Source of the DNA: Macrostomum lignano
Taxonomy: Eukaryota
Direction of reading: 5' to 3'
Length of the DNA stretch: 64,000 nucleotides
Assembly (NCBI GenBank): GCA_002269645.1
Contig: NIVC01001722.1
Span: 181,922 to 245,921 of the forward strand
Part shown: positions 15,533 to 57,311 of the stretch, piece after piece
Numbering within the stretch: the first letter of the stretch is position 1
Layout of the letters: each line of letters starts with the position of its first letter
The notes under the pieces: generated by a model
Seen by the model: the letters and a program-made list of their open reading frames with translations, nothing else
What the model was told of the DNA's origin: nothing
Databases searched by the model: none
Translations under genes and position numbers: made by a program

Positions 15533-15584
<52 letters not shown>

Positions 15585-18440: not shown

Positions 18441-18757
18441 CTAGGCAGCCCTTCCAGGCTACCCCTTTCATGGCAACCACTTCCAGGCTATCTCCTACTT
18501 TGCCCCTGCGTACTGTCTCCATTATGTTCGAAATTGAGAAGATTGTTTCGCTTCGGTATTATTTAAAAATATAATGCATCATTATTTACTTCAGACGCTT
18601 CACTCTCATCATTTCAGGTGCGTACATGCGAGCCAGCTAATGCTGACGCCGAACTTTGTATTCGGCTTTCCAACGAGGAAAAGTGCGTTTATGAAAGCCA
18701 ATAGGGATTTGGGATGCCAGAAAAGATATTCTATTTTGCTAGGATCCGATAAATGCT

Positions 18758-19117
18758 GCCGCTTCGGCTGCAGTGACCACCGGCTCAAGCGGAGGACGAT
18801 CGCAGGACTGCTTGCTGCCTGCCGCTTCGGCTGCAGTGACCGCCGGCTCAAGCGGAGGACGATCGCAGGACTGCTTGCTGCCTGCCGCTTCGGCTGCAGT
18901 GACCGCCGGCTCAAGCGGAGGACGATCGCAGGACTGCTTGCTGCCTGCCGCTTCGGCTGCAGTGACCGCCGGCTCAAGCGGAGGACGATCGCAGGACTGC
19001 TTGCTGCCTGCCGCTTCGGCTGCAGTGACCGCCGGCTCAAGCGGAGGACGATCGCAGGACTGTTTGCTGCCTGCCGCTTCGGCTGCAGTGACCACTGGCT
19101 CAAGCGGAGGACGATCG
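18758..19117. repeat. 63-bp tandem repeat (~6 copies) in the left arm only
   Basis: GCCGCTTCGGCTGCAGTGACCGCCGGCTCAAGCGGAGGACGATCGCAGGACTGCTTGCTGCCT repeated; the right arm has one partial unit. Confidence 0.9.
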
Positions 19118-27841: not shown

Positions 27842-27905
<64 letters not shown>

Positions 27906-34381: not shown

Positions 34382-36117
34382 CAGTAGAACTACCAAGAGG
34401 GGGGGAAATTCCCCCCCCCCTGACAATTTTTTTCGCTGCGCCAGAACGGAGCAACGCAAGCACACGAAATTTAAGAAAACGGGCTAACTTTTTGTAGCGC
34501 ACCTTCTCAAACAAGAATCAAGTCGCCAGCCCTTCGGACCGTCGAGATATTCGACGATTCTGCCAGAAGGTCGGATTTTTCCCATATGTGCTTTGTATTC
34601 AGTACATCCCTGTGCGCCAATCAGCACTGCGCCTCAGTGCAGCCTTGCCAAGTCTCCAAATTTCATCAGCACGTCGAACACATGTGTCTGCATCAGTTCT
34701 GACTTCGTTGGTCACTAGCCTTCACCCAAGTGGAGCTTCTGGACCCTCAACAGCTGTGGCACCAGGTGACTATAGACACCCTGATGCGGATTTCTCTAGT
34801 TTCGCCGATCAAGCCTCGAAAGTGGGCAAGAATCAACCGCCAGAAATTCTCAGCTAGTCTCTCAAGCATTCCGTCATCATCCCGACGCCGTCGGCTCCTT
34901 CAACAGATTACACCAGGTGACTATGGACAGCCTGTTGCAAATATGTCAGGTTTTTCTTATCAAGCTTCAATAATGAGCAAACCTAAACTGCTGGACATCC
35001 TCAGCTAGTCAGTCAAGCATTCAGCCATCACCCGGACGCCGTCGGCACCTTCAACAGGTGGCACCAGGCGAGTAAGGACACCTGAGCGTGATTTTTCATC
35101 ATGCTCTTAACATTTCTGAATCATTAAAAAATGAAAAAACCGATTGAATTTACTGGATTCTTAAAAGCATAACCCTTTCTGGATAAGAATTCGGTTCAAT
35201 TATTATAGTTGAATAAACTAAACAGCTTTTCGAATAAAATTTGTATGTAGCTCGTATGCATAAAAGTATGTGTAATAATAATATAAATGTACAGCAACAT
35301 AAGTTCAAGCTTAACTATAGCAATGTCCGTGCTTTAAAAATTTTGAGAGCTTCAGAAATGTTAAGAGCATGATGAAAAATCACGCTCAGGTGTCCTTACT
35401 CCCCTAGTGCCACCTGTTGAAGGTGCCGACGGCATCGGGGTGATGGCTGAATGCTTGACTGACTAGCTGAGGATGTCTGGCAGTTGATTTTTGCCCACTG
35501 TCGAGGCTTGATCGGCGAAACTAGAGAAATTCTTATCAGGCTGTCCATAGTCACCTGGTGTAATCTGTTGAAGGAGCCGACGGCGTCGGGATGATGACGG
35601 AATGCTTGAGAGACTAGCTGAGAATTTCTGGCGGTTGATTCTTGCCCACTTTCGAGGCTTGATCGGCGAAACTAGAGAAATCCGCATCAGGGTGTCTATA
35701 GTCACCTGGTGCCACAGCTGTTGAGGGTCCAGAAGCTCCACTTGGGTGAAGGCTAGTGACCAACGAAGTCAGAACTGATGCAGACACATGTGTTCGACGT
35801 GCTGATGAAATTTGGAGACTTGGCAAGGCTGCACTGAGGCGCAGTGCTGATTGGCGCACAGGGATGTACTGAATACACTAGCACTTATGGAAAAATCCGA
35901 CCTTCTGGCAGAATTGTCGAATATCTCGACGGTCCGAAGGGCTGGCGACTTGATTCTTGTTTGAGAAGGTGCGCAACAAAAAGTTAGCCCGTGTTCTTAA
36001 ATTTCGTGTGCTTGCGTTGCTCCGTTCTGGCGCAGCGAAAAAAATTGTCAGGGGGGGGGGAATTTCCCCCCCTCTTGGTAGTTCGACGGGCGGAAAAATG
36101 GCTTGGTATTCCTACTG
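34382..36117. mobile_element. Foldback element (1.74 kb) with ~734-bp inverted arms and TTAA flanks
   Basis: Arms 34387-35120 and 35351-36084 with a 230-bp spacer. Termini are CAGTAG...CTACTG with TTAA on both sides (34378-34381, 36118-36121). Each arm has an internal 151-bp tandem unit. Confidence 0.8.
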
Positions 36118-41078: not shown

Positions 41079-44000
41079 TCAGTTTTTCCTCATAGGCGGC
41101 TTCAGCGCCCAGTTCGGCGCCCCGTCAGGAGGCGGCCGCTGCGACCTGGAGCGCAGCGGATCCCGGATGCAGCGGCCCAGCTGCTGCTTCTGCTTGGTGG
41201 TGGCGCAGTTGTCCATGTAAACCTGGTCAAGCTGGCGTTTCAATCGTTTCACTTCGTCCGATTCCCAGGCGAGCTCGCGGACGCGCAGCTGGTCGGAGCC
41301 GCCGGAGCCGCACTCCTCGTCGGAGCTGGTGTAGTCCCGGGTGAGGATGACGCGGAACTTCTCCAGCTCGTCCGAGCTGAGGCTGGTGGCCACGAGTTCG
41401 AAGCTTTTCTGGCGTCGGTTCAGCTTCTGGAAGGTCGACGATGAGGATAAGAGGTTGGCGGAGAATGTGATTTGGGGACTCTGATGGGAGAATGGGATTT
41501 GGGGACTCTGATGGGAGAATGGGATTTGGGGATGCTGATGGGAGAATGGGATTTGGGATGCAGGTGGGAGCATGGGATTTGGGGTGCTGTTGGGACAATT
41601 TGATTTGAGGATTCAGGTGGGAGAATGGGATTTGGGGATGATTGTGGGAGAATGGGATTTGGGGATGCTTGTGGGAGAGTGGGATTTGAGGATTCTGGTG
41701 GGAGAATGGGATTTGGGGATGCTGATAAGAGAATGGGATTTGGGGATGCTGATGCGAGAATGGGATTTGGGGATGCTGATGGGAGAGTGGGATTTGAGGA
41801 TTCTAATGCGAGAATGGGATTTGGGGATGCTGATGGGAGAGTGGGATTTGAGGATTCTAATGCGAGAATGGGATTTTGGGATGCTTGTGGGAGAGTGGGA
41901 TTGAGGATTCTGGTGGGAGAATGGGATTTGGGGGATGCTGATAAGAGAATGGGATTTGGGGATGCTGATAAGAGAATGGGATTTGGGGATGCTTATGGGA
42001 GAGTGGGATTTGAGGATTCTAATGCGAGAATGGGATTTTGGGATGCTTGTGGGAAAGTGGGATTTGAGGATTCTGGTGGGAGAATGGGATTTGGGGATGC
42101 TTATGGGAGAGTGGGATTTGAGGATTCTAATGCGAGAATGGGATTTTGGGATGCTTGTGGGAAAGTGGGATTTGAGGATTCTGGTGGGAGAATGGGATTT
42201 GGGGATGCTGATAAGAGAATGGGATTTGGGGATGCTTATGGGAGAGTGGAATTTGAGGATTCTAATGCGAGAATGGGATTTTGGGATGCTTGTGGGAGAG
42301 TGGGATTTGAGGATTCTGGTGGGAGAATGGGATTTGGGGATGCTGATGGGAGAATGGGATTTGGGGATGCTTGTGGGAGAATGGGATTTGAGGATTCTGG
42401 TGGGAGAATGGGATTTGGGGATGCTGATGGGAGAATGAGTTTCTTCAAGGAATTTAGAATCTCGATTTGGACCGGATCATATTTATGGAGGAATGGAATG
42501 AGAAATGGTTTCGATACGGCAATTATCGGTACCTTACCATCCGGTTTTGAGTGGTAGTCACAAAGCTAATCAAATAATAATGTAAATTCTATACAATATG
42601 ACACTGCACTAAAGTAGAAGCGCCCCTAAAGAATCCCACGGGCCAAGTCTGCAGACTAGAAGTAGATTTTTAATCTGAACAGGCAGATAAGCAAGCAGTA
42701 TTGGACGATTGGCCAAATGGAATAACTCATTACTGTTAGGCGAAGCTTGCTGCGCATCTGCTTTCTAAAATCCCAGAAAATGTCAGTCAGCCGGCTAGTT
42801 TTAGGCAGTCCTGCGCGCAAAGATAACAGTTGCTTATTGTAAATCGGGGCGAATTGAATTTTTGATTTTAAACTTGCACTGCTGGAGCCAGAGAGGACGA
42901 TAAGTAGAATAGAATGCTTTTATTCCGACAAAATTTTGCTGGAGGTTAATAGACTAAGCAAGTGAGCAGTCTGATTACATTATGGCGCAGTTTGATCCGA
43001 ATCTGCTTCCCAAAGTCCCAGAAAATCTCCGACAGTCGGCCAGCCTTTGGCAGCCCTGCGAAGTTTAAACAATTCATCATAATAATTTGCATTATTAGCT
43101 ATGGTCTGCGTTGCTTAATTCGGGCAAGGGTGAAGAGTAAACAAGAGAGTGAACAGAAAAGTGAAGAGAGTGAATAGGAGAGTGAACAGAAAGGTGAATA
43201 GAATGAACAAGAGAGTGAACAGAAAGGTGAAGAGAGTGAACAAGAGAGTGAACAGAAAGGTGAAGAGAGTGAAGAGAGTGAACAGAAAGGTGAAGAGAGT
43301 GAACAGAGTGAACAGAAAGGTGAATAGAGTGAACAAGAGAGTGAACAGAAAGGTGAAGAGAGTGAAGAGAGTGAACAGAAAGGTGAAGAGAGTGAACAGA
43401 GTGAACAGAAGGTGAATAGAGTGAACAAGAGAGTGAACAGAAAGAAGAGAGTGAACAGAAAGGTGAATAGAATTAACAAGAGAGTGAACAGAAAGAAGAG
43501 AGTGAACATAAGGGTGAATAGAATGAACAAGAGAGTGAACAGAAAGAAAGAAGAGAGTGAACAGAAAGGTGAAGAGAGTGAATAAGAGAGTGAACAGAAA
43601 GGTGAATAGAGTGAACAAGAGTGAACAGAAAGAAGAGAGTGAACAAGAGAGTGAACAGAAAGGTGAAGAGAGTGAACAGAAAGGTGAATAGAGTGAACAA
43701 GAGTGAACAGAAAGAAGAGAGTGAACAAGAGAGTGAACAGAAAGGTGAAGAGAGTGAACAGAAAGGTGAATAGAGTGAACAAGAGTGAACAGAAAGAAGA
43801 GAGTGAACAAGAGAGTGAACAGAAAGGTGAAGAGAGTGAATAAGAGAGTGAACAGAAAGGTGAAGAGTGAACAGAAAAGTGAAGAGAGTGAACAAGAGAG
43901 TGAACAGAAAGGTGAAGAGTGAACAAGAGAGTGAACAGAAAGGTGAAGAGAGTGAACAGAAAAGTGAAGAGAGTGAACAAGAGAGTGAAGAGAGTGGTGA

Positions 44001-47000
44001 AGAGAGTGAAGATGAAGAAGTCCTCATTTTGGCTTTAAGCAGTTACAAAAAATTGCAAATACAAGCACAATGCAGCCCTTCTTGCCAATCCTAGTTGGAA
44101 ACAGGGATAAAATATACGACTAGAATTGGTCCCACGGTTGGCACACAGGAGAAGGAAAAGCATTGAAATCAAAATTACACTTAGGCGAAATTTAGTCCGA
44201 ATCTGCTTCCCAAAGTCTCTGAAAATCTCGCACATTCGACCGGCTTTTGGTAGCCCTGCGAAAAAAACGCATTTAGATGGAAGAGATACAGGCTTTGTTT
44301 CAATCGTTTTTTTTGCGCTTGCATTATTGATTCGAGAAGAGCGGTGGATGGTGTAAAAGATAATAAAGATGCGAAAATGTTACGAAATCGATCTATTGAT
44401 TTAGAGTAGGCTATGCTCAAATAAGTTAGGACAGTTGGATCCTATTCTAGGTCTATTCTCAAAGTAATAAAGGGTCTATTCTCAAAGTAATAAAGGGTCT
44501 ATTCTCAGTGGTAATCAAGGTCTACTCTCTTGATGATGAAGGGTCTATTCTCAGGTGTAATAAAGGTCTACTCTCTGGGTGATGAAGGGTCTATGCTCAA
44601 GGTGACGGAGGTCTATTCCCAAGGTGATAAAGGGTCTAGGCTCAAGGTGACGGAGGTCTATTCCCAAGGTGATGAGGGTCTAGGCTCAAGGTGACGGAGG
44701 TCTATTCCCAAGGTGATGAGGGTCTATTCTCAGGAATAATGAAGGATGGATTCTGGATGGTGATAGGGTGATTTTGCATAGACTAGATTCCAGAATTAAC
44801 TAAAAACTGGCAGATTTGAGCGCAAGGAAATCAGAAAATGCAGAAAATGCGATGTAAGTAATATAAATATTAAACTCGTTTCTTTGGCTTCAGCAAGTGT
44901 TTTTGGTATTTTTGTGCAAAATTTTTTATTGGAATGGAGTTGATAAATGCCAAAATTTGAAACGCAGGCATTGGTAGATTAAAACTATGCTTTCCGAAGA
45001 ATAATATATCCCTTACTAAGCCGCGATATTTGTCGTGCACTTGTCGCTTAAAGTCGCTAAAAATGACGGACAGTCTGCCAGACTTGGGCAGGTCTACAAT
45101 ATAGCGCAGAGTTTTTATGGGCACAAATGCAAGCAAGCTACTGAAAGTAGTACAATTTAGCGGCACTATTGCCTGCTGATTTGGAATGGAAACGTCTGAA
45201 ACAAACAGCTACAGTAGAGCTGGGGCTATCCTATTAACTATAGCGAGAACATAACTCACAAGCTGCTTAAACTTGCATCTGGCCTTCAGAGCAAAATCGG
45301 AAAACATGTACAGAATACGACCGCGACAAGGAATCCCTGAAACACAGACGGAGTCAATAATCTCTGAAAACAGTGCAGAGTATATACTGCTCTTGACCAG
45401 CTGTGCTAGAACGACACCATGCTCGTTGGAAACGGCGCTTTTCTTTGGTTCAAAGAATTATTTCCTGGATTACTAAGCACTAAATAACTTACAGACAGTC
45501 TCATTTTCAAACGACTTGCGGAGCGAAAATTTTGAAATATATACAGCAGCCTACACGAGGTGGGGATTCCTTCGGATGGAGGGCGGCGACCGCGATTATT
45601 TTTTTATATCGAGATTTATATGTGCAGAGATAAGAAAGTCGCAAGTGCTTTGTGACCCGGCAGTAGTAGACTATTACTAGCAGTAGGTAGTCTCGGGTTT
45701 AACTTAAAAAGACAGACTCACGCTAATCCGATATTTGGCCCGAATTTTGGTGCCAAAATTGGAGTGCAAATAGTTAATCCGACTGTCCTTAGGGAGGTCT
45801 GCAATCGATGCCAGTAAAATCAATAAAATCAATCACGCTTCGGTAGGAGTAAAGAGCGAGGGCCAAGGAAGGAAAACATCGCAAGCTGCTGAGGCGCTAA
45901 GAAATTTGAAAGATGCCTACTTAAACTTAGTAGTATATATGAAATTGCACGTATTTATCAATCTTACAAAGCTTCTAAACCGGAAGCGCATTTTCCGGCG
46001 CAAATCGATAAATAGGAAGATAGTGCGCGATGCGTAGGGCAGCTCTGAAATCTAGTGTTTTATGGTGCTGCTTTGGGGCCGGAATCTGCCGCTAAGGTAG
46101 ACAGGCCTAATTGCCTACTGAAAACGTCGCTAGAGATCAATTTACGGAGTTCAGACAGACGAAGCACTGAACAGGTGATTTTCGTTTATAAGTTTATTAA
46201 CTTCGATCTAAACTACAGATACTAGAATAACTAGATGGACCACTCAGCACATTTGCGTGTAAGCTACTTGCAGTTCAGTATAAAGTTATACAGAAGCATT
46301 TTAATGTATTTTTCAAGACAAGGCTCATTTATTTTCTATGAAACACTAAAACCTACCCCAAGCTGCCAAGTACATTTCAGTGGGGTGTTGGCCAATGTAC
46401 AATACGACTGAACCAATTAGCAAGTTGTTTACGTCTGCAAGCTTTGTTTGTTTGTTTGGCTTCTAAACTTATCAAAGTCATTTGAGCTTATGTTTTCTTC
46501 TTTGCTACTGAACTGGAAGTAGAAAGCTGTTTTACTAAATAAATATTCACAAGTGGCCCCATCTAGTTATTTTAGTATTTTGTGCACTAAACAGAGTAAT
46601 GATCTTGATTAGACCTCAATACAGAGTTCCATTGCATCGAGATTCACCCCTAGAATCCTAAGCATCCCTTGACAGGAACGGATCCCGAGACTTCTACCCT
46701 CACAACCAAGCTAATAGCTTGCTAAAACAAAGAAAAACAAGAGAGCCACAACACCAAAAAACCATGACAGCTGCTCATCCTGTCTTACTGTCTCTCTGTA
46801 CTTGGCCCTAAGCGCGCTGCGTATGTGACAAAACACCCTGTCAGGCCGGGATTTGTACGGCAAATCTGTAAGCATTAAATATTTTGTTAAATAATAATTC
46901 CTAGCCTCTAATCAGCATTTAGCCGGAACCAAATTAGACGAAATGGATTAGAAACGTCACAAGAGCACCTATTGATTAAATTGAACAGAAGAGACCGGAT

Positions 47001-50000
47001 TGACTAAATCAAACCAACTTGGGTCTCACATTAAGTTTCAAAGCGTGCCTAGACTCGAAGCGCATTTTAGAGAATGCTGTTGAGATTCGAAATTCGCTTC
47101 GCAGTCCTGAAATTGAACAGGTCTGAACTATGCCGCTCTGCCTTGTTTCAAATTCACTTTTTCTCATTGCTCTGCACTTGTTGGAAGGAGAAACCGCCAT
47201 TTGCCGGCTAATCCCAACTTACTAGCGCTTTGAAACGCTTTTTAGCGTCGGTTCTAAACGAAATGAAAATCATTGAGATCCGCGCCTCTTTCGGCAGCCC
47301 TGCAAACGCGCGCAATTGTTAAGGCGGGGCATTGAGCTTAAACAAATAGGGGAGATCTGAACTCGGCTTTCACAGGCCTGGAAACGGCTTTGCTTCATTT
47401 CTGTTATCATTTAAACAGAAAATATTTAATACTACTGTAAAAATGCGACATCTACTACTTACGCAAAGTTTAAGTCGCGTTCTGGCGTTTAGTTTAAACG
47501 ACTTGAATATAAAGTTAATTCGGCCATCTTTAGGCAGCCCTGGAAATCGGCCAATCGGTTGTTGCCTCTTGTATATTAACTAAGAAGAGATATTTGCATC
47601 TGGAAACGCTGCATGCAGCTCAGTGGACTCAAGCTCAAGGCGAATAATAGGGAAGCCAGAACTGTTAAAGTTTGCTCCTTCAGTTAAGCAAGAGTATATA
47701 TCCCTATCCGTTGTCCCATCAACACTTACACACAGTTTAAGCCGGGCTCTGGCATTCCGTCTAAAGGACAGAAATATAAAATTTATTCGGCCCTCTTTTG
47801 GCAGACCTAAAAAAACAGATTGCATACGAATAAATTGGATTCTCTTGGCCCAGCAGCTGACATTTTTGTCAGTGTCAATTGACTTGACCGGAGAATCTGG
47901 AAACGCTGCAGCTAAAGTTTAAGCATTCGAATCCATAGCAGCCGGAGTCAGACTGGAGGCGACACGCAATGACACATAACTTGATAAATACTATTAGTCG
48001 CAGCACTTACAGAAGTTTTCAATCTAAGCCGCATATCGCGACGGAATTCAGCGAACATGGCGACAGTACGCCTTAGCAGTTCTACAATTTTTTTTCAATA
48101 ATTTAAATATAATAACAGTGCACAAATATCCTTTTAATACTACTATCCAGCGGCCTAGTTAGTAGCAGATGCACATAGTGTACTATAAAATGTCAGATCT
48201 ATAAAAAAACTGGGTATAAACAGCTGACAAGGGCAGAATAGCGGGACGTTACCAATTGGTGAAGAAAGACAGCAGTCAGAACCCCATTTTTATTGAAAAT
48301 AATAGTTAATTAGGTAATTAATTCATACGCGACTTACAATTGATGGCAGCAATTTTATTGCCATTACTCAACAATTTATTGCTGAATATAATATATAAAA
48401 ACAAATTATAATATTATTTAAAATTGAGTGCATTGCTTCGAAAGGTGAAAGATAGTGTTTTAAAATTATAAATGAAATTATTGCCTCTGAATTATATGTC
48501 ATATTTAGTAAATTTTAACATAGATAATTTAATTTGCTCAAGCCAAAGAACTTGCGACGTTTCCAGACCAAGTAGGCAAGGAGAAAAAGTGACACATTTG
48601 GAATTACACAAGCTGCTTATATAATAATTATTAACAGTGCTTGTACTTGCTATCAGTAGTAGTATGCAGAGAATATTGTTTCAAATGCACAAATTCGCAA
48701 GCAAGATATTCAACTAGTTAGTAGGCTTAAGGGAGGCGACCAACAAAGAGTTAAATTTATTGATTTTTTGGTGCACCAATATCTCAGCTTTGCATCCCTG
48801 TCAACTTAATAAGCACCAATTCTTGTTAAATGCATCATATACACAATATTATCATTCCGTGTTAGACAGAACCTTCGTATTTATCCAGCTATAAAGATAA
48901 TTGATTTTCAATATCAAGCCGCCAATCTCAAGCCTACACTAATATGCTCAATACTACGGTAGCTAACAGCTGCACATTAAGTGCCAAAAAATGCCAAACT
49001 CACTCTGCCAGACGTCGTCCGGCCAGCCTTTGCCTTCGGCCATCTCTTTAGCCTTAGCCATGACCATGGCGGCAACTTGTTGGTTGGGCTCCGCGGAGAA
49101 GCTAAGCGAGAGGACAAGTGGGAATCGAGAGGAGCAGGAATTAGCCAATTTAATGCAGCCATACATTATTAATAAAGAATGGGGACGGCAACTCACTGAA
49201 GGATTTGGGGATGGGGACGGCAACCCACTGAAGGATTTGGGGATGGGGACGGCAACCCACTGAAGGATTTGGGGACGGGGAGGGCAACCCACTGAAGGAT
49301 TTGGGGATGGGGAGGGCAACCCACTGAAGGATTTGGGGATGGGGAGGGCAACCCACTGAAGGATTTGGGGATGGGGAGGGCAACCCACTGAAGGATTTGG
49401 GGACGGGGAGGGCAACCCACTGAAGGATTTGGGGATGGGGAGGGCAACCCACTGAAGGATTTGGGGATGGGGAGGGCAACCCACTGAAGGATTTGGGGAT
49501 GGGGAGGGCAACCCACTGAAGGATTTTGGGGATGGGGACGGCAACCCACTGAAGGATTTTGGGGATGGGGACGGCAACCCACTGAAGGACTCCGCATTCA
49601 AGCTTTACTTACGGCATGCTAAAATCGAATAGGTGAGGTCCGTTTCCTTTAAGCATTTTGTAGGCTCGTCGCATGATAGTCTTGCACTCGGGGGGCACGT
49701 CGCCGCCGCTTCCGCCGCCGCCGCCGCCGCTGCTGCCGAAGCCGCTGACGCCGGCTCCGGAATAATCGGCGGACAAGTCGAGTCGAGGAATTTTGGCATA
49801 GGGGAATCCGGCGCTAAGACTGTCGTCGTTCAGCTCCTCCGTGATGATGCAATCGTCTTCCTCCTCTTCGTCGGCTTCGTAATCGTCGCCTTCCACCTGT
49901 GATTCGACATACATAACGGCTGCGTTTTAGACACAACATTAATGTGCTCGGGCGATCAAATGACCTTGAGTAATAGCAGAGTCAAATGACCTTGAGTGAT

Positions 50001-50944
50001 AGCAGAGTCAAATGACCTTGAGTGATAGCAGAGTCAAATGACCTCGAGTGATAGCAGAGTCAAATGACCTCGAGTGATAGCAGAGTCAAATGACCTTCAG
50101 TGATAGCAGAGTCAAATGACCTTCAGTGATAGCAGAGTCAAATGACCTCGAGTGATAGCAGAGTCAAATGACCTTCAGTGATAGCAGAGTCAAATGACCT
50201 TGAGTGATAGCAGAGTCAAATGACCTCGAGTGATAGCAGAGTCAAATGACCTCGAGTGATAGCAGAGTCAAATGACCTTGAGTGATAGCAGAGTCAAATG
50301 ACCTTGAGTGATAGCAGAGTCAAATGACCTTGAGTGATAGCAGAGTCAAATGACCTTGAGTGATAGCAGAGTCAAATGACCTTCGGTGATAGCAGAGTCA
50401 AATGACCTTCAGTGATAGCAGAGTCAAATGACCTTCGGTGATAGCAGATTAAAATGACCTTCAGTGACGGTGGCAACACAGTTTTAAAACGACTAACCTT
50501 AATGGCGCCAAGCGCCGCGCCCAGCACGCTACTGGCGCCCATGTCGCCAAGTACAGACGCTTTCTCTTCCTTAGTTGAAGCATTGGCGCCGCCAGACAAA
50601 GACGAGGCGGCAGTTGATTCGCGATGCAGCTGCTGATGCTGCGATGGCGGCGGCTGTTGCTGCTGGTGCTGCTGCTCTCCGGACACGCTGGCGACAAGGC
50701 CGGCGGCTTCTAGCTCGGCGAGCCGGTCGCTTCGATCGAATGCCCGACAATACCTGGGCTCCATGGAGTGAACCACGTGAGTGTGCAGATTGCCGATGAT
50801 TTTCAGTGCAGAGAACAGTTCGCGCTCGGCCATGGACTCTACGAGCATTTGCGCGTTAGTGATGGTGGATTCGAACAGGGTGAGAGGCGAGAAACTGTTG
50901 CCAGGCGGCAGCAGGCTCGAGTGCGGGCTGAGTACGTCTGCCAT
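41079..50944 (-). CDS. C14orf93/RTFC-like nuclear protein, paralogue B, with a variable cassette exon
   Basis: Exons 50498-50944, 49613-49896 (CKTIMRRAYKMLKGNGPHLFDFSMP), 49004-49101 (PFSAEPNQQVAAMV...DDVWQ), one cassette from 42734-48081, and 41079-41426 (KLNRRQKSF...RDYTSSDEE...LRVRELAWES...RQLD...RPPP). All junctions are GT-AG and in frame (417 aa by the direct path). The motifs parallel recalled human C14orf93 segments (KLRSRR, EELMSDEED, HLD, SDRLP). Confidence 0.7.
41455..42437. repeat. ~28-30-bp G-rich intronic minisatellite (GGGATTTGGGGATGCTGATGGGAGAAT variants)
   Basis: In the last intron of paralogue B; generates several spurious long ORFs. Confidence 0.9.
43130..44025. repeat. Purine-rich compound minisatellite (GAGTGAACAGAAAGGTGAAGA/GAGTGAACAAGA)
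   Basis: Inserted between cassette exons 44179-44255 and 42979-43055. Confidence 0.9.
44440..44735. repeat. Degenerate tandem repeat (GGGTCTATTCTCAAGGTGAT variants)
   Basis: Intronic, between cassettes 45017-45093 and 44179-44255. Confidence 0.75.
48551..48569 (-). promoter_or_regulatory. Putative RNA docking site for mutually exclusive splicing (pre-mRNA GGUCUGGAAACGUCGCAAG)
   Basis: Lies between the upstream constitutive exon (ends 49004) and the first cassette. It is complementary to motifs at 47896, 47599, 47377, 46949, 46118, 45872, 45633, 45427 and 45187, each 60-94 nt upstream of a cassette acceptor. Confidence 0.75.
49197..49590. repeat. 32-bp intronic minisatellite (CCACTGAAGGATTTGGGGATGGGGAGGGCAAC)n
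   Basis: About 12 copies in the paralogue B intron 49102-49612. Confidence 0.95.
49960..50460. repeat. 26-bp intronic minisatellite (GTCAAATGACCTTGAGTGATAGCAGA)n
   Basis: About 19 copies in paralogue B intron 1. Confidence 0.95.
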
Positions 50945-51004: not shown

Positions 51005-51730
51005 TGAACCTGTAAATCCCATAATTCAACCTTTAACTCCCTAAATCAAACCTGTAAATCCCTAAATTGAACCTGTAAATCCCATAATTCAACCTGCAAC
51101 TCCCTAAATCAAACCTGTAAATCTCTAAATCGAAGCTATAAATCCCATAATTCAACCTGCAACTCCCTAAATCAAACCTGTAAATCTCTAAATCGAAGCT
51201 ATAAATCCCATAATTCAACCTGCAACTCCCTAAATCGAACCTGTAAATCCCTAAATCGAACCTGTAAATCCCTAAATCGAACCTGTAAATCCCTAAATTG
51301 AACCTGTAAATCCCTAAATTGAACCTAAAACTCCCTAAATTGAACCCGTAAATCCCTAAATTGAACTTGTAAATCCCTAAATTGAACTTGTAAATCCCTA
51401 AATTGAACCTGTAAATCCCTAAATTGAACTTGTGAATCCCTAAATTGAACTTGTGAATCCCTAAATTGAACCTGTTAATCCCATAATTCAACCTGCAACT
51501 CCCTAAATCGAACCTGTAAATCCCTAAATCGAACCTGTAAATCCCTAAATTGAATTTGTAAATCCCTAAATTGAACCTAAAACTCCCTAAATTGAACCTA
51601 AAACTCCCTAAATTGAACCTGTTAATCCCTAAATTGAAATCCCATAATTCAACCTGCAACTACCATAATCCAGGCTGTAAATACCATAACTGAACCTGTA
51701 AGTCATAATTGAACCTGTAACTACCTGGTA
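51005..51730. repeat. 21-bp minisatellite (AACCTGTAAATCCCTAAATTG)n
   Basis: Directly upstream of the paralogue B ATG. Confidence 0.9.
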
Positions 51731-52691: not shown

Positions 52692-55600
52692 TTAAATGTT
52701 AGTTTTGAAATCCTCCGCCAGCGCCCAGTCCGGACAGTCTGTAGGTGGCGGCCGGCCGCTAACGCTGCTCGAATCTCTGATTGTCCGGCGCAGCTGTTGC
52801 GACTGCTTCTGATTGGCGCAGGTTTCTAAGAATGCCTCGTCCAATTGGCGCTTCATGCCGGCCATCTCGGCGGACTCCCAGGCTAGCGAGCGGACTCGGA
52901 GAGCTCCGCTGCCGCCGGCTCCTCCACCGCCGCCGCCGCCTCCGAGTTCGTCGCTGGACAAATCGGCCGCGGTGGCATCCTCATCGGAGGAGGTGTAATC
53001 TCTGGACAGCAGGACGCGGTACTTGTCAAACTGATCGGTTGACAGGCTGCTAGCTAACAGTTCGAAGCTCTTCTGCCGGCGGGCTAGTTTCTATGGGGAA
53101 ACAGGCGAGGGCCAGAGGGGACGGGGGTCAAGTGGGATTTTAGTACATTTCATTCTGGTGCATCAAGCTATACAATATATATTACTATTAAACTTTTTTA
53201 TAGCATCATACTTACCTGCCCAAGCTGCCCTAAGGTAAAAGTATTATAAATTCAGTATTATTAACATATACTCGTACAAACTTTCTGTAAGCAGGAGAAA
53301 CAGAATATGAAGGCAGCACTAGAATGAGAGAAGATACTTTGCCAGGTAAGAAATGTCCCCAGTGCATGAAACTGTCTCACGTTCATGAGACATTGGTACT
53401 ATTATTTATGCGCTTATAAGGGCGGTTCTAAATGTGTGTATGGGGCGATTTCTAATGTGCTTATAGGGAGATTCTTAATGCACTTATAGGACGATTCTTA
53501 ATGCACTTATAGGGCGATTCTTAATGCACTTATAGGGGCGATTCTTAATGCACTTATAGGGAGATTCTTGATGCACTTATAGGGCGATTCTTAATGCACT
53601 TATAGGGAGATTCTTAACGCACTTATAGGGCGATTCTTAATGCACTTATAGGACGATTCTTAATGCACTTATAGGGAGATTCTTGATGCACTTATAGGGC
53701 GATTCTTAATGCACTTATAGGGGCGATTCTTAATGCGCTTATGGGACGATTTTCACGGGCTTATAGGACGATTCTGAACGGGCTTATAGGACGATTCATA
53801 ATGCGCTTATAGGACGATTCTCAACGGGCTTATAGGGTGATTCTTAATGCGCTTATAGGACGATTCTCAACGGGCTTATAGGACGATTCATAATGCGCTT
53901 ATAGGGCGATTCTTAATGCGCTTATAGGACGATTCTCAATGGGCTTATAGGGCGATTCTTAATGAGCTTCTAGGGCACATCTTAGGGCGGTGTTCGCGCG
54001 GAGTTAGAGCAGAACCAACCCAACGGCCAAGACCTAACAACCTACTCTTTGGCGATTTCTTTGTCTGCGCTTTTCGGCCGCGAATTTCTCTCGCATTTTC
54101 AGCGCACTAGAGCTGAGATCCTGGGCAAACAGGTACAGTTCGTCTGAAAACAGCGGTTTAAAAACAACAAGAAGTCAAAGATTGAGTTTAACTGAAAATT
54201 CTAAAAAAGCTTTAAGCCAGTGCCAGAAACACGTTTGAATGGCGCTAATCTGGGCGAGCATTTCGGTGACAAAACATGGAAATTTAAAACACCACAAAAA
54301 CAATCTGTCAGTCTATCAATTAATCAATGAAATCATTATAAATAAACATTCTCGGACCTTTCTTCGACTGCGCAGTTTGCTCATAGCGAGCTTGTTGCTG
54401 CTGCGCCTGTTCTGCACAGCCCGCTGCATGTTGCAATAAACGTCAAGAAATAAGCCTAAAATAGTCATAAATTAGTATGCAAGTTGTTTTATTTATGCCC
54501 AAACTACTGACAAGTAGTGCACTTGGGGATCGCAATATTTATCGAATGGTGTCGTGTCGCATTCATAGCTGAGGCCAGTGTGAAAAAAGCGGAAATAAAA
54601 ACAATGGCATTAAAATTAATACTTGCTGACACCATTGAAACTCGCGGTACTATTAATATACCTTCTGTTTGTAGCGAATCCTCCTTATCCGCATTTTATT
54701 CTTATGCAGATCGTCTTTAACTAGGCCGTACTGCTCCCGGGCGGCGGCTAAAAAGATCGCATTTATTAGCAAAAACCTTTAGCGAGTACTACTATAAGTA
54801 GTTAATCAGCATGTAAGAGCACTTGCGATCTTGTGACCTTGAACCAGCGACATAGTGATAATGATGGAGAATACAATGAATAAAACTTTAATTATTTTCC
54901 AACAAAGAAACGTGTGGTGTTAACAACTAGAATCAATTAATTAATGATTAACTGTTAAATAACGGAGTTAATTAGATGATTAATTGCATAAAAAGGCTAG
55001 CAAAAGTGCCGGATCTAACATTAACGACCCATGGCATTTGCTAACATATTTAACATTAACGGCACCATTTTGTGATAATGTAGACATAGATAATGGAAAC
55101 TCCTATAAAATGGCTTGACGGTCACCAAATGCAAGGAATAGGCCCATCGTGTACAACGGCAGCTTATCTGGCAGCTTGACATTTTCATAACTATTTAGTA
55201 AGCGAGAATTATATGATTTTATAAAGAAGAATTTGCTAACTTACTCCACCACACGTCCTGCGGTATGCCAGGCAGTGGCAGCTGTCTCTGCGCGTGAGAC
55301 ATCACCTGTTCTGCTACGCGCTGATTCACCGAGTCTGTAAAACTAAAATGGGCAGAAGGGTGGCCGGAACTAATAAGGTGTATGCAGATAGGCAATTAGC
55401 TTTGTATGGCACTTGGTAGCTAGGCACATAGGCAGTAAAAAAACTTTCTTATTGGGCTTGACCTAAGAGGCCTGGACCTTAAGGTTATTGCTAATGAGGT
55501 TAGAGGGTTATTGCTAATGAGATTAGAGGGTTATTGCTATTGAGGTTAGAGGGTTATTGCTAATGAGATTAGAGGGTTATTGCTAATGAGATTAGAGGGT

Positions 55601-57311
55601 TATTGCTAATGAGGTTAGAGGGTTATTGCTAATGAGATTAGAGGGTTATTGCTAATGAGATTAGAGGGTTATTGCTATTGAGGTTAGAGGGTTATTGCTA
55701 ATGAGATTAGAGGGTTATTGCTAATGAGGTTAGAGGGTTATTGCTAATGAGATTAGAGGGTTATTGCTATTGAGGTTAGAGGGTTATTGCTAATGAGATT
55801 AGAGGGTTATTGCTAATGAGATTAGAGGGTTATTGCTAATGAGGTTAGAGGGTTATTGCTAATGAGATTAGAGGGTTATTGCTAATGAGATTAGAGGGTT
55901 ATTGCTATTGAGGTTAGAGGGTTATTGCTAATGAGATTAGAGGGTTATTGCTAATGAGGTTAGAGGGTTATTGCTAATGAGATTAGAGGGTTATTGCTAT
56001 TGAGGTTAGAGGGTTATTGCTAATGAGATTAGAGGGTTATTGCTAATGAGGTTAGAGGGTTATTGCTAATGAGATTAGAGGGTTATTGCTAATGAGGTTA
56101 GAGGGTTATTGCTATTGAGTTTAGAGGGTTATTGCTATTGAGTTTAGAGGGTTATTGCTAATGAGGTTAGAGGGTTATTGCTAATGAGATTAGAGGGTTA
56201 TTGCTAATGAGGTTAGAGGGTTATTGCTAATGAGATTAGAGGGTTATTGCTAATGAGGTTAGAGGGTTATTGCTAATGAGATTAGAGGGTTATTGCTAAT
56301 GAGGTTAGAGGGCCATTGTTAATGATCTTAGAGGGCCATTGTTAATGAGCTTAGAGGGCCATTGTTAATGAGCTTAGAGGGCCATTGTTAATGATCTTAG
56401 AGGGCCATTGTTAATGAGCTTAGAGGGTCATTGTTAATGAGCTTAGAGGGCCATTGTTAATGAGCTTAGAGGGCAGTGCGACACAAATAACTTAAAACGG
56501 GCGTTTCGTAATGAGTTTAAACAATAAGATTAGTGTGCGATTATCGAACTCACGGCATAGAAAAGTTGAACAGATGCGGCCCGTTTCCTTTTAACTCTCT
56601 ATACGAGTTGCGCAGCGCCGATCTGCACTCGCTGTTGACGCCGGTCACAGGCAAAGCTGCTGCCCCAGCTACTGACAGCTCCTGGCTGGTGCCAGCCGCT
56701 GCAGTTTCTTGACGAGTTCGCTTCCTACTAGGAGACGCTGCAACAGCGGCCGAGGCGGCGGCAACGCCGGGCGGCGGAGCAAAAGCGGCAGCTGAGCCAG
56801 CAAGAGAACCGTCCTCCTCCATGATCAGGCAATCGTCAATAGAGTCCTCATCCTCAATCAATAGCTGCTCCTCTTTGACGCTGCCGCTGCCAAATAGTGA
56901 GATGCTGCGGCCGCCAGCTGATTGGGCGGCGTCGAACTCAGTTTTTGGCCGAGTCGAGGCGCCATTGGCTGTGGCCTGGCTGACAGTGCCAGCGGCGGCT
57001 ACTGACGATGGCAGCGGAGATGACGCAGCCGAAGATGTTGTGGCGGCGGCGGCGGCGCCAGACAGGAGGCAGGCTCCGTGAGCTTCGCTCCGAGCAAATG
57101 CTCGCTCGCATCTGGGCTCAATAACGCCAACAATGTGCGTGTGAAGGCCGCTGGCAATGCGGAGAGCGTGCAGCAGCTCTCTATCAGCCATGGATTCAAT
57201 CAGCATCTGAGCGTTAGTAATTGTGCACTCGAATAGTGTTAATGGAGAAAAATTGTTTGAATTGTTTGGGGCACCAGCGTTGCCGCTCAATTGCGCTACT
57301 TCGCAAGCCAT
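52692..57311 (-). CDS. C14orf93/RTFC-like nuclear protein, paralogue A, with at least 3 alternative exons
   Basis: Exons 56554-57311 (FSPLTLFECTITNAQMLIESM...GPHLFNFSMP), 55245-55342 (98 nt, same length and phase as the B exon), one of 54662-54747 / 54358-54455 / 54046-54143, and 52692-53090 (KLARRQKSF...RDYTSSDED...LRVRSLAWES...RQLD). It is clearly paralogous to gene B. Confidence 0.72.
53440..53985. repeat. ~22-bp intronic minisatellite (GGGCGATTCTTAATGCACTTATA)n
   Basis: In the last intron of paralogue A. Confidence 0.9.
55480..56472. repeat. 23-bp intronic minisatellite (GAGGGTTATTGCTAATGAGATTA)n
   Basis: About 43 copies in paralogue A intron 1. Confidence 0.95.

What the first reader, a model, noticed from the sequence alone, without database searches (positions are those of the whole stretch)
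42734..48081. Dscam-like array of 14 mutually exclusive cassette exons in a C14orf93-like gene
Seen in sequence: between exon 49004-49101 (ends phase 1) and exon 41079-41426 (starts phase 0) lie 13 exons of exactly 77 nt and one of 71 nt, mostly ~240 bp apart, each with AG/GT sites and an open frame. In gene order the peptides are KLLRRTVAMFAEFRRDMRLRLKTS, SLPKEGRINFIFLSFRRNARARLKLC, RLPKDGRINFIFKSFKLNARTRLKLC, RLPKEARISMIFISFRTDAKKRFKAL, RLRSEFRISTAFSKMRFESRHALKLN, NLPYKSRPDRVFCHIRSALRAKYRET, KLPYASRTIFLFIDLRRKMRFRFRSF, NLPKDSRINYLHSNFGTKIRAKYRIS, RIPTSCRLLYIFQNFRSASRLKMRLS, RIPCRGRILYMFSDFALKARCKFKQL, NLPKSGRLSVIFSDFKRQVHDKYRGL, RLPKAGRMCEIFRDFGKQIRTKFRLS, RLPKAGRLSEIFWDFGKQIRIKLRHN and RLPKTSRLTDIFWDFRKQMRSKLRLT. 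Counting from the first full codon of the 77-nt exons, R6 is invariant (13/13) and P2 and F11 are 12/13, with synonymous codon variation. Including one cassette keeps the frame; including zero, two or three breaks it. Established: such arrays are known in arthropod Dscam1, Mhc and a few other genes. Inference: this is an isoform-diversification system in a putative nuclear DNA-binding family; I know of no description of it there.
Basis: partly seen in the sequence, partly recalled or inferred. Interest (0 to 1): 0.96.

Follow-up and report, generated by a model that had tools for sequence, protein, structure and literature searches.

The report
Flatworm Dscam-style mutually exclusive exon array
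A gene of the flatworm Macrostomum lignano carries 14 interchangeable 77-base exons, only one of which fits into each mRNA, together with a conserved intronic "docking" sequence that can base-pair with a matching "selector" in front of most of these exons. This is the exon-choice device known from the insect Dscam gene, and I found no report of it in flatworms.

Summary
On the minus strand there are 13 exons of 77 nt and one of 71 nt (42734-48081), all with AG/GT sites and an open frame. A profile of them finds nothing else in the window. The window is Macrostomum lignano contig NIVC01001722.1, where GenBank annotates only a truncated gene, so the array is unannotated there.

Exactly one cassette gives an intact 415/417-aa protein. 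Skipping, and all 91 two-cassette combinations, lose the conserved C-terminus. RNA-seq-derived models contain one cassette each: c10 in the 99 % identical second copy, and one cassette in a paralogue.

New here: a 17-nt docking site (CTGGAAACGTCGCAAGT, 48566-48550) lies in the first intron. It is identical in three diverged paralogous arrays (14, 5 and 7 cassettes) and absent from single-exon paralogues. Complementary selectors lie 48-120 nt upstream of most cassettes. They are specific to the real docking sequence and show a bias toward G·U-preserving changes.

This is a Dscam-exon-6-type competing-RNA-structure system in a flatworm, for which I found no prior description. Mutual exclusivity is not shown for most cassettes. 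c1, c5 and c12-c14 lack clear selectors. "C14orf93-like" is only a plausible remote homology. "Nuclear DNA-binding" has no support.

The parts
50498..50944 (-). Coding exon 1 (ATG at 50944-50942; ends in phase 0, donor GTTAGT)
   Evidence: Read. The spliced ORF was verified. It matches P0002 and P0214 residue for residue.
49613..49896 (-). Coding exon 2 (starts VEGDDYE; ends with 2 bases of a codon, donor GTAAGT)
   Evidence: The same junctions appear in the RNA-seq-derived model P0214.
49004..49101 (-). Coding exon 3, the constitutive exon upstream of the array (FSAEPNQQVAAMVMAKAKEMAEGKGWPDDVWQ; ends in phase 1, donor GTGAGT)
48536..48580 (-). Docking site. The invariant 17-nt core CTGGAAACGTCGCAAGT is at 48566-48550, 438 nt downstream of the exon 3 donor. 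Locus-specific flanks add pairing.
   Evidence: An unbiased duplex scan of the first intron picks this region (median -25 vs -13 kcal/mol background). The core occurs once on the gene strand. It is 17/17 identical in L001, L002 and L004, and is the only invariant block in the aligned first introns. It is absent from single-exon paralogues.
48011..48081 (-). Cassette 1 (71 nt, KLLRRTVAMFAEFRRDMRLRLKTS). Divergent, with an A-rich tract before its acceptor and no detectable selector.
   Evidence: HMM 15.6 bits; no selector.
47730..47806 (-). Cassette 2 (77 nt)
47463..47539 (-). Cassette 3 (77 nt)
47223..47299 (-). Cassette 4 (77 nt)
47030..47106 (-). Cassette 5 (77 nt)
46789..46865 (-). Cassette 6 (77 nt)
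45968..46044 (-). Cassette 7 (77 nt)
45722..45798 (-). Cassette 8 (77 nt). It is the only cassette in the UniRef model P0001, which is low-weight evidence.
45493..45569 (-). Cassette 9 (77 nt)
45260..45336 (-). Cassette 10 (77 nt). It is the only cassette in the RNA-seq-derived full-length model P0214 of the 99 % identical second gene copy.
45017..45093 (-). Cassette 11 (77 nt)
44179..44255 (-). Cassette 12 (77 nt; weaker donor GTAATT)
42979..43055 (-). Cassette 13 (77 nt; donor GTAATC)
42734..42810 (-). Cassette 14 (77 nt; donor GTAATG; no selector found)
47897..47913 (-). Selector for c2 (AGCTGCAGCGTTTCCAG; 14/17 paired; 90 nt upstream of the acceptor)
   Evidence: 0/200 shuffles reach it.
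47600..47616 (-). Selector for c3 (15/17 paired; 60 nt upstream)
   Evidence: 0/200.
47378..47394 (-). Selector for c4 (CCGTTTCCAG core; 11/17 paired; 78 nt upstream)
   Evidence: 3/200.
47185..47201 (-). Weak candidate selector for c5 (11/17 paired)
   Evidence: Not significant on its own.
46948..46964 (-). Selector for c6 (TCTTGTGACGTTTCTAA; 15/17 paired; 82 nt upstream)
   Evidence: 0/200.
46118..46134 (-). Selector for c7 (15/17 paired). It lies 73 nt upstream of c7 but 635 nt downstream of c6, so selectors go with the downstream exon.
   Evidence: It is the only match to the docking core with 3 or fewer mismatches on the opposite strand.
45870..45886 (-). Selector for c8 (GCTTGCGATGTTTTCCT; 15/17 paired including 3 G·U; 71 nt upstream)
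   Evidence: 2/200.
45630..45646 (-). Selector for c9 (ACTTGCGACTTTCTTAT; 14/17 paired; 60 nt upstream)
   Evidence: 1/200.
45426..45442 (-). Selector for c10 (AAAAGCGCCGTTTCCAA). An upstream CCAAAGAA also pairs with the window-specific docking flank.
   Evidence: 0/200. The register and coordinates were fixed by hand.
45186..45202 (-). Selector for c11 (14/17 paired; 92 nt upstream)
   Evidence: 0/200.
44956..44972 (-). Weak selector-like sequence (TGCGTTTCAAA), about 45 nt downstream of c11 and about 700 nt upstream of c12. A minisatellite (44450-44732) lies between it and c12.
   Evidence: Read. Not significant.
44075..44143 (-). Selector-like sequence downstream of c12 (core CCTGTTTCCAAC plus GGCAAG, which pairs with the docking flank). 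A minisatellite (43134-43996) separates it from c13 by about 1 kb.
   Evidence: E -34.5 kcal/mol, z -5.8, 0/100 shuffles.
41079..41426 (-). Last coding exon (starts in phase 0 with KLNRRQKSFEL; stop codon included). It encodes the most conserved C-terminal module of the family.

Best explanation
This is a cluster of 14 mutually exclusive exons in a Macrostomum lignano gene of unknown function. Each mRNA takes exactly one cassette between exon 3 and the last exon, giving up to 14 proteins. These differ in a 24-26-residue basic segment: the N-terminal half of a long helix in the conserved C-terminal module. Hydrophobic and arginine/lysine positions are fixed and the other positions vary. Exon choice most likely works as in the Dscam exon 6 cluster. 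A single docking site in the intron after exon 3 can base-pair with only one of the selector sequences at a time. The selectors lie about 60-90 nt upstream of the individual cassettes. The pairing loops out the cassettes in between and brings the chosen acceptor close to the exon 3 donor. mRNAs with no cassette or with several are out of frame and lose the conserved C-terminus. SHOWN from sequence: the array, the frame rule, the coding constraint on cassettes, the docking/selector complementarity, its conservation in three paralogous arrays, and its absence from single-exon paralogues. SHOWN from public RNA-seq-derived models: single inclusion of c10 and of one paralogue cassette. INFERRED: that the RNA pairing forms and directs choice, how downstream cassettes are skipped after the choice (an unknown repressor, by analogy with hrp36), that all 14 cassettes are used, and what the variable helix binds.
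For: Coding constraint: dN/dS is 0.09-0.44 with pS 0.46-0.74 among recent duplicates, and all 25 77-nt cassettes in three loci are open. The paralogous loci L001 (5 cassettes) and L002 (7 cassettes) also have exact 77-nt AG/GT exons. Transcript-derived GenBank models (StringTie/TACO on RNA-seq, PMC5730564) each contain one cassette: P0214 is exons 1-3, c10 only, and the last exon; P0003 and P0208 contain L001 cassette 3 only. Docking site: the unbiased scan finds it. The 17-nt core is unique in the window, identical in all four array loci, and the only conserved block in otherwise unalignable introns. It is absent, allowing 4 mismatches or fewer, from the single-exon paralogues L005 and L006 and from the tandem neighbour. 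Selectors: 0-3 of 200 dinucleotide shuffles reach the observed energy for window c2-c4, c6 and c8-c11 (c7: 9/200). Selectors are found for L001 c2-c5 and L002 c1-c7 with varying support (0-2/200 for six of them, 11-41/200 for the other five), 48-120 nt upstream of the acceptor, including in introns of 0.7-1.5 kb. Mean pairing is 13.0/17 against 11.3±0.18 for 1000 shuffled docking cores (maximum 12.0). 14 of 26 cassettes have at least 13 paired positions, against 2.4 expected. The docking-sense control gives background values. Selector substitutions favour G·U-preserving transitions: 20/29 at C/A sites against 6/20 at G/T sites, Fisher p=0.01. Selectors fit their own locus's docking flanks better in all three locus pairs (-4.3, -2.1 and -6.6 kcal/mol; p=0.06, 0.18 and 0.045). 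All selectors overlap the same docking nucleotides, so pairing is intrinsically one at a time. AlphaFold places the cassette at the start of a long helix in a confidently folded module.
Against: I had no RNA-seq reads or junction counts. Only two cassettes (c10 and L001 cassette 3) are documented by transcript-derived models. One model (P0209) skips all cassettes. Several models end in the first intron (P0002, P0009, P0212). Window c1 and c14 have no detectable selector, and c5 has only a weak one. The candidates for c12 and c13 are weak or lie 0.7-1 kb away behind minisatellites. Most cassettes have strong GTAAGT donors and ordinary 116-200-nt introns, so something not visible in the sequence must prevent inclusion of neighbouring cassettes. 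The selectors share a conserved sequence (CGTTTC), so a protein-binding motif cannot be excluded. The wobble test is affected by relatedness among selectors and by choosing alignments on pairing. The cis/trans test is only marginal. Only 14 of 91 double inclusions place the stop more than 50 nt upstream of the last junction, so NMD alone would not remove most mis-spliced forms.
Confidence: 0.75

Rival explanations
1. The array is a real mutually exclusive cluster, but choice does not depend on RNA pairing. On this view the repeated intronic motif (…GCGACGTTTCC…) is a binding site for a splicing regulator that was copied along with each exon. The complementary upstream element is a second site or a by-product. 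Exclusivity comes from splice-site competition plus loss of out-of-frame products.
For: The selectors share a conserved core sequence (CGTTTC is nearly invariant). Five of the 14 window cassettes lack convincing selectors. All zero- or multi-cassette products are out of frame. A skipping transcript exists.
Against: The upstream element is the exact reverse complement of the motif. It is conserved 17/17 in three loci and occurs only where an array exists. Docking-sense copies are not enriched near cassettes. The substitution pattern is strand-asymmetric in the way G·U pairing predicts. Complementarity extends into locus-specific flanks.
Confidence: 0.13
2. Most cassettes are unused relics of tandem exon duplication. 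The gene effectively uses one or a few cassettes, so there is little real isoform diversity.
For: Transcript-derived models document only c10, plus c8 in a low-weight model. c1 is shortened and divergent. c12-c14 have weaker GTAAT donors and lack nearby selectors.
Against: All 14 cassettes keep AG/GT sites and an open frame despite near-saturated synonymous divergence, and dN/dS is 0.09-0.44. A random 25-codon frame stays open about 30 % of the time (my estimate), so 25 of 25 77-nt cassettes open in three loci is not expected for relics. Cassettes have collinear counterparts in the paralogous arrays. Most cassettes retain a selector.
Confidence: 0.07
3. The 77-nt units belong to a transposon, a satellite or another transcript, and their fit to this gene is coincidental.
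For: The surrounding introns are full of minisatellites, and more than half of the M. lignano genome is repetitive (PMC5730564).
Against: The units occur nowhere else in the window. They are not detected as tandem repeats. They encode the family's own conserved segment at the right position. A single homologous 77-nt constitutive exon sits at the same place in paralogue P0018. Transcript models splice them into this gene. There is no Rfam match.
Confidence: 0.01

Closest known systems
Drosophila/insect Dscam1 exon 6 cluster (docking site and selector sequences; Graveley 2005; May et al. 2011, as cited in PMC3923563 and PMC6071210)
   Same: Both are tandem arrays of homologous exons of equal length that are not a multiple of 3. 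Both have one docking site in the intron just downstream of the upstream constitutive exon, and one selector upstream of each variable exon. All selectors compete for the same docking nucleotides. In both, the docking site is the most conserved intronic element.
   Different: The phylum differs (Platyhelminthes rather than Arthropoda), so the system probably arose independently. The gene family is unrelated and of unknown function, not an Ig-superfamily receptor. There are 14, 7 and 5 cassettes rather than 48. The cassette encodes part of a basic helix rather than half an Ig domain. The docking sequence is unrelated. No repressor equivalent to hrp36 and no locus-control element has been identified. 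Some cassettes lack a selector. The same architecture is present in three paralogous genes.
Other arthropod competing-structure clusters: Dscam1 exons 4 and 9, 14-3-3ξ, Mhc, srp, PGRP-LC (PMC4691838, PMC6191721, PMC3535345)
   Same: All use intronic RNA pairing between one shared site and several alternatives to enforce or bias the choice of one exon.
   Different: In those clusters the docking site is often downstream or acts in both directions, and most have only 2-5 exons. Here the docking site is upstream and I found no convincing downstream docking site.
Flatworm muscle myosin heavy chain cluster-8 mutually exclusive exons (PMC3912159)
   Same: These are mutually exclusive exons in Platyhelminthes, so the splicing mode itself exists in the phylum.
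   Different: That cluster has only two exons and is inherited from the bilaterian ancestor. In the passages I searched, the only mention of RNA secondary structure is in a cited reference title.
Mammalian ATE1 exons 7a/7b and similar pairs (PMC7797038)
   Same: Competing intronic RNA structures control the choice of a mutually exclusive exon outside arthropods.
   Different: Those are two-exon switches with several regulatory elements, not a many-exon array with one docking site.
Tandem-duplication model for the origin of competing structures (Ivanov and Pervouchine, PMC6071210)
   Same: The duplication unit here (exon plus about 165 nt of intron) carries its selector with it. Paralogue P0018 shows the presumed single-exon starting state.
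   Different: The single-exon paralogues have no docking core. I did not look for the ancestral stem that the model requires.
C14orf93 / RTFC protein family (Pfam PF15394, DUF4616)
   Same: The C-terminal module aligns collinearly, motif by motif: N..V, AC..YF, basic stretch, T.E.MSDEE, L..LD, S.R.P. hhalign gives 73 % probability, E 3e-5, over 158 columns.
   Different: There is no Pfam hit at any threshold. The N-terminal conserved motifs (FSPLTLFE…, GPHLFDFS) are not shared. The vertebrate protein is not known to have cassette exons.

Membership tests
Mutually exclusive exon (MXE) cluster | Tandem array of homologous exons of (nearly) the same length, encoding the same protein segment | tested here: met
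   13 exons of 77 nt and one of 71 nt; HMM 35-47 bits (15.6 for c1). They align to one conserved segment of the family.
Mutually exclusive exon (MXE) cluster | Compatible splice sites and phases on every member | tested here: met
   All members have AG…GT and run from phase 1 to phase 0. The same holds for the 12 cassettes of L001 and L002.
Mutually exclusive exon (MXE) cluster | Reading frame preserved only when exactly one member is included | tested here: met
   14 of 14 single inclusions give a full ORF. Skipping and all 91 pairs give premature stops.
Mutually exclusive exon (MXE) cluster | Mature transcripts contain exactly one member, with different members in different transcripts | tested here: inconclusive
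   RNA-seq-derived models carry one cassette each: P0214 (c10), and P0003 and P0208 (L001 cassette 3). P0001 (c8) comes from a less reliable annotation. P0209 skips all cassettes. No read-level data were available, and 12 of the 14 cassettes are undocumented.
Docking-site/selector competing RNA structure system (Dscam exon 6 type) | A single docking site in the intron next to the flanking constitutive exon | tested here: met
   One exact copy per locus, in the first intron, in the window, L001, L002 and L004.
Docking-site/selector competing RNA structure system (Dscam exon 6 type) | A selector complementary to the docking site associated with each variable exon, with all selectors overlapping the same docking nucleotides | tested here: inconclusive
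   Clear for window c2-c4 and c6-c11. Found for L001 c2-c5 and L002 c1-c7, of which six are reached by 0-2 of 200 shuffles and five by 11-41 of 200. Weak, displaced or absent for window c1, c5 and c12-c14 and for L001 c1. The feature is met for most exons, not all.
Docking-site/selector competing RNA structure system (Dscam exon 6 type) | The docking site is the most conserved intronic element among homologous genes | tested here: met
   17 contiguous invariant columns in otherwise unalignable introns of paralogues whose proteins are 46-77 % identical to the window gene. This was tested on paralogues within one species, not on orthologues.
Docking-site/selector competing RNA structure system (Dscam exon 6 type) | Evolutionary signature of base pairing (wobble-tolerant or compensatory change) | tested here: inconclusive
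   G·U-preserving transitions are enriched (p=0.01-0.03). The cis>trans flank fit points the right way in 3 of 3 comparisons but is marginal. The docking core is invariant, so classical covariation cannot be seen.
Docking-site/selector competing RNA structure system (Dscam exon 6 type) | Disrupting and then restoring the pairing changes exon choice | not testable with these tools
   This needs minigenes or genome edits. Transgenesis exists for M. lignano (PMC5730564).
C14orf93 / RTFC (Pfam PF15394, DUF4616) | Match to the Pfam model at or above its gathering score | tested here: not met
   No PF15394 hit for the window exons, the flatworm paralogues or distant relatives, even at E<=10. Real C14orf93 proteins carry PF15394.
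C14orf93 / RTFC (Pfam PF15394, DUF4616) | Significant profile-profile similarity to bona fide members | tested here: inconclusive
   hhalign of the family alignment A2 against the C14orf93 alignment A3 gives probability 73 %, E 3.1e-5, 158 collinear columns.

The most novel reading that the evidence does not exclude
A docking/selector exon-choice machine evolved independently in flatworms and runs in at least three paralogous genes (14, 7 and 5 cassettes, 490 combinations if the proteins act together). It would give stochastic or cell-type-specific choice of a variable basic helix, and so a molecular diversity or recognition code in a protein family with no known function. That would make Dscam-type RNA-guided exon choice a repeatedly evolvable solution rather than an arthropod peculiarity.
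Probability: 0.2. Interest if true: 0.9.

Novelty: new member of a known kind. Interest (0 to 1): 0.8.

Why it matters
In the literature I could search, large mutually exclusive exon clusters governed by a docking site and competing selectors are described only in arthropod genes. Outside arthropods, only two-exon switches are reported. An independent case in a flatworm would matter for four reasons. First, it would show that the mechanism is a convergent, general solution that tandem exon duplication can produce. Second, it offers three paralogous natural replicates of different size (14, 7 and 5 cassettes), plus single-exon paralogues that look like the starting state. Third, it sits in an organism with working transgenesis, so docking and selector mutations can be tested directly. 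Fourth, it points to a functionally important variable helix in an uncharacterised, strongly expanded protein family that may be remotely related to human C14orf93/RTFC. In practical terms, the array is missing from the GenBank annotation of this locus, and older gene models string several cassettes together. Annotation pipelines therefore mishandle it.

Tried and rejected
(1) Pfam scans of the window exons, flatworm paralogues and distant relatives gave no meaningful family, even at E<=10.

(2) Word-indexed homologue searches with the full isoform and with an 18-sequence alignment returned only M. lignano proteins and two mussel proteins. They gave no informative names and no transcript fragments carrying other cassettes.

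(3) An AlphaFold model followed by Foldseek against the PDB found no structural analogue (best E 2.1).

(4) I looked for a second, downstream docking site in the last intron that could serve c12-c14. Only GC-rich background appeared.

(5) Comparing the two 99 % identical gene copies for selection gave cassettes 0.37 % against introns 0.9 % divergence, p=0.11. The copies are too similar to be informative.

(6) My first own-versus-foreign docking comparison was confounded, because the window's docking flanks are GC-richer. I replaced it with an interaction test, which is only marginal.

(7) Searching papers and two supplementary files for the gene identifiers, to find expression data, gave nothing.

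(8) Rfam over the locus gave no match.

(9) I set aside the UniRef A0A1I8… models (P0001, P0006, P0007, P0023, P0213, P0215). Several of them join multiple cassettes through shifted, non-standard boundaries, which looks like ORF-maximising prediction rather than transcript evidence.

(10) I rejected the transposon or other-transcript origin; see the rival explanations.

Full report
WHAT IS THERE

The window is eukaryotic. It is 100 % identical to contig NIVC01001722.1 of the Macrostomum lignano Mlig_3_7 assembly. There are 13 of 77 nt and one of 71 nt. Each has an AG acceptor, a GT donor and the stated open frame.

A profile HMM built from the 13 full cassettes scores them at 35-47 bits and c1 at 15.6 bits. 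Nothing else in the six-frame translation of the window exceeds 9.7 bits.

GENE MODEL AND FRAME RULE

I reconstructed the gene as follows:
- exon 1: 50944-50498
- exon 2: 49896-49613
- exon 3: 49101-49004
- one cassette
- last exon: 41426-41079

All 14 single-cassette mRNAs give an intact ORF of 415 or 417 aa. Skipping the array, or including two or three cassettes, shifts the frame. All 91 two-cassette combinations reach a stop before, or within 4 nt after, the start of the last exon. They therefore lose the 115-residue conserved C-terminus. Only 14 of the 91 put the stop more than 50 nt upstream of the last junction, so NMD by the usual rule would not remove most of them.

THE CASSETTES ARE CODING SEQUENCE UNDER CONSTRAINT

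Among the most recent duplicates (c12/c13/c14 and c2/c3), synonymous sites are heavily diverged (pS 0.46-0.74) while non-synonymous change is low. dN/dS is 0.09-0.44 for the pairs that could be estimated.

The consensus over 25 cassettes from three loci is [LI]-P-x-x-[SG]-R-[IL]-x-x-[IL]-F-x-[DN]-F-[RGK]-x-x-x-R-x-[KR]-x-[RK]. Hydrophobic and basic positions are fixed and the rest vary.

TRANSCRIPT EVIDENCE

GenBank's BOX15_Mlig models derive from a genome-guided RNA-seq assembly: StringTie and TACO plus de novo transcripts (PMC5730564).
- At the window locus, the only model (P0002) stops by reading into the first array intron. The array is therefore unannotated there.
- The DV1 line carries duplicated chromosomes. 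A 99 % identical second copy (L004, NIVC01000127.1) has the same 14 cassettes with identical peptides.
- The model for that copy, P0214, has exactly my exon structure and contains cassette 10 only.
- In a paralogue, P0003 and P0208 contain one cassette only.
- P0209 joins exon 3 directly to the last exon. This is a skipped, frameshifted transcript.
- UniRef models from the older ML2 annotation either use c8 only (P0001) or stitch several cassettes together through shifted boundaries (P0006, P0007, P0023, P0213, P0215). I treat these as ORF-maximising predictions and give them little weight.

THE SAME ARRAY EXISTS IN PARALOGUES

Locus L001 (gene Mlig018137g1, 77 % identical protein) has 5 cassettes. 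Locus L002 (Mlig032950g2, about 46 % identical) has 7. Every one is exactly 77 nt with AG/GT sites. Several cassettes have their best match in another locus rather than next door, for example window c8 with L001 c5 (64 %) and window c13 with L002 c3 (68 %). The array therefore predates the gene duplications.

A more distant paralogue (P0018, locus L005) has a single constitutive exon of exactly 77 nt at the same position and phases, in introns of about 90 nt. This is a plausible picture of the state before duplication. The tandem neighbour in the window (57356→52695) has one unrelated-looking exon at that position and no array.

THE MECHANISTIC CLUE: A DOCKING SITE AND SELECTORS

Docking site. 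I scanned every 30-nt window of the first array intron for complementarity to the inter-cassette introns. One region stood out, 48580-48536, with a median duplex energy of -25 kcal/mol against a background of -13 (SD 3.7). Its 17-nt core, CTGGAAACGTCGCAAGT (48566-48550), has these properties:
- It occurs once on the gene strand of the window. The only relative with 3 or fewer mismatches lies on the opposite strand and is the c7 selector.
- It is present exactly once, 17/17 identical, in the first array intron of L001, L002 and L004.
- It is the only invariant block in an alignment of those otherwise unalignable introns.
- It is absent, allowing 4 mismatches or fewer, from the single-exon paralogues L005 and L006 and from the tandem neighbour.

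Selectors. Complementary selectors are found for window c2-c4 and c6-c11, L001 c2-c5 and L002 c1-c7. They lie 48-120 nt upstream of the acceptor (60-92 nt in the window). Where introns are long (0.4-1.5 kb), the selector stays next to the downstream exon, so it belongs to that exon.

Statistics:
- Zero to 3 of 200 dinucleotide shuffles of the intron reach the observed energy for eight window cassettes (c7: 9/200). In the paralogues, six of the eleven selectors are reached by 0-2 of 200 shuffles and the other five by 11-41 of 200.
- Mean ungapped pairing is 13.0/17, against 11.3±0.18 for 1000 shuffled docking cores (maximum 12.0).
- 14 of 26 cassettes have at least 13 paired positions, against 2.4 expected. 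A search for docking-sense copies gives background values.

All selectors pair with the same docking nucleotides, so only one can be bound at a time.

Two further tests address RNA pairing specifically:
- Selector substitutions are enriched for G·U-preserving transitions: 20/29 at C/A positions against 6/20 at G/T positions in the central part, Fisher p=0.01.
- Each locus's selectors fit their own docking flanks better than foreign ones in all three pairwise interaction tests: -4.3, -2.1 and -6.6 kcal/mol, with p=0.06, 0.18 and 0.045.

Both tests are suggestive rather than decisive. The selectors are related to each other, alignment choice favours pairing, and the samples are small.

WHAT IS NOT EXPLAINED

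- Window c1 (71 nt, divergent, A-rich tract before the acceptor) and c14 have no detectable selector. c5 has only a weak one.
- c12 and c13 have selector-like sequences (44972-44956 and 44143-44075; the latter has z -5.8 with the extended docking site). Minisatellites separate them from their exons by 0.7-1 kb, and those minisatellites differ in length between the two gene copies.
- c12-c14 also have weaker GTAAT donors.
- I found no second docking site.
- Nothing in the sequence tells how downstream cassettes are skipped once one is chosen. Most cassettes have strong donors and ordinary 116-200-nt introns.

THE PROTEIN

The family is strongly expanded in M. lignano. It has uncharacterised relatives in a starfish, a hemichordate and freshwater mussels; a profile search gives 405 representatives at E<=1e-3.

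It has no Pfam domain. I retrieved real C14orf93 homologues carrying PF15394. A profile-profile comparison gives 73 % probability, E 3e-5, over 158 collinear columns. "C14orf93-like" is therefore a plausible remote relationship, not a membership.

C14orf93/RTFC is itself poorly understood. In the papers I found it appears as a thyroid-cancer susceptibility gene and, in mouse, as a secreted chemoattractant. Nothing supports "nuclear DNA-binding".

AlphaFold models a confident C-terminal module (pLDDT 80-93). In it the cassette forms the end of a short helix plus the N-terminal half of a long basic helix that continues into the constitutive KL·RRQ segment. No solved structure resembles it. In distant single-exon relatives the cassette position aligns to a conserved "AC··YF·S··D…basic" segment. 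The cassettes are thus alternative versions of a structural element with a conserved core and a variable surface, which is the usual logic of mutually exclusive exons.

COMPARISON WITH WHAT IS KNOWN

The architecture matches the Dscam1 exon 6 cluster: an upstream docking site, one selector per variable exon, competition for the same nucleotides, and a docking site that is the most conserved intronic element.

In the literature I could search, docking/selector systems are described for arthropod genes and for a few mammalian two-exon switches. For flatworms, only a two-exon cluster in myosin heavy chain genes is described. Nothing on Macrostomum or on these genes turned up.

I therefore file this as a new member of a known kind: a docking/selector mutually exclusive exon cluster in a new phylum and a new gene family, probably of independent origin, present in three paralogues.

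VERDICT

- The core interpretation is supported and mechanistically strengthened.
- The family assignment is only remotely supported, and the DNA-binding label is unsupported.
- Confidence that this is a genuine mutually exclusive cluster whose choice is guided by docking/selector RNA pairing: 0.75.
- The decisive missing evidence is read-level junction usage and docking/selector mutagenesis.

Noticed in passing
window 52695-57356 (- strand): A tandem paralogue lies immediately upstream. It matches P0005 (Mlig001175g1, annotated on the second-copy contig). It belongs to the same protein family and is about 41 % identical. It has a single, dissimilar exon (NELYLFAQDLSSSALKMREKFAAEKRRQRNRQR) where the array sits, and it has no docking core.
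   Followed up: partly
window 41460-42437, 43134-43996, 44450-44732, 49179-49589, 49956-50467, 51005-51726, 53401-53976, 55483-56473: Almost every long intron or spacer of the two tandem genes is filled by a different minisatellite (periods 21-45 nt, 12-43 copies). Those in array introns 11 and 12 differ in length between the two 99 % identical gene copies (761 vs 936 nt; 1123 vs 1504 nt). They separate selector-like sequences from c12 and c13.
   Followed up: partly
window 15465-18831 and 24315-27961: A large inverted duplication has arms of about 3.4 kb that are 94-100 % complementary, around a central segment of about 5.5 kb. The arms contain proline-rich tandem repeats (PGYPSQATLPRLPF…). 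It could be a real palindrome or an assembly artefact.
   Followed up: no
window 34384-35130 and 35341-36087: A second inverted repeat has arms of about 750 nt, 94-98 % complementary, only 210 nt apart. It looks like a hairpin-forming element or a foldback transposon.
   Followed up: no
window 48966-49003 (intron after exon 3); L002 about 11657-11690: In two array genes the RNA-seq-derived GenBank models (P0002, P0009, P0212) end by reading from exon 3 into the first array intron. This could reflect assembly breakage at the variable junction, or real intron retention or premature termination upstream of the docking site.
   Followed up: partly
L001-type gene copy (protein P0209, Mlig014561g1): A transcript-derived model joins exon 3 directly to the last exon, skipping all cassettes. 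The result is a frameshifted tail (KAQPSPAQLRTGCHQPQH). Some unproductive skipping therefore occurs.
   Followed up: partly
L002 12182-15078: Five of the seven cassettes of this paralogous array have non-consensus donors (GTACGC, GTGCGT, GTTAGT, GTCAGT, GTTGGT), unlike the mostly GTAAGT donors in the window. Splice-site strength may contribute differently to exon choice in the different arrays.
   Followed up: no
L005 5744-5820: Paralogue P0018 has one constitutive 77-nt exon (IPNQYKINAMFFDFRCKIKRKNLLS) with the same phases. It sits in introns of about 90 nt and has no docking or selector sequence. It is a candidate for the ancestral single-exon state.
   Followed up: yes
window 45798-45788 (start of c8): An internal AG lies 11 nt into cassette 8 (CCTAAG|GAC). 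Used as an acceptor after another cassette, it would restore the frame. Two older gene models (P0023, P0215) use it. I do not know whether it is ever used in vivo.
   Followed up: no
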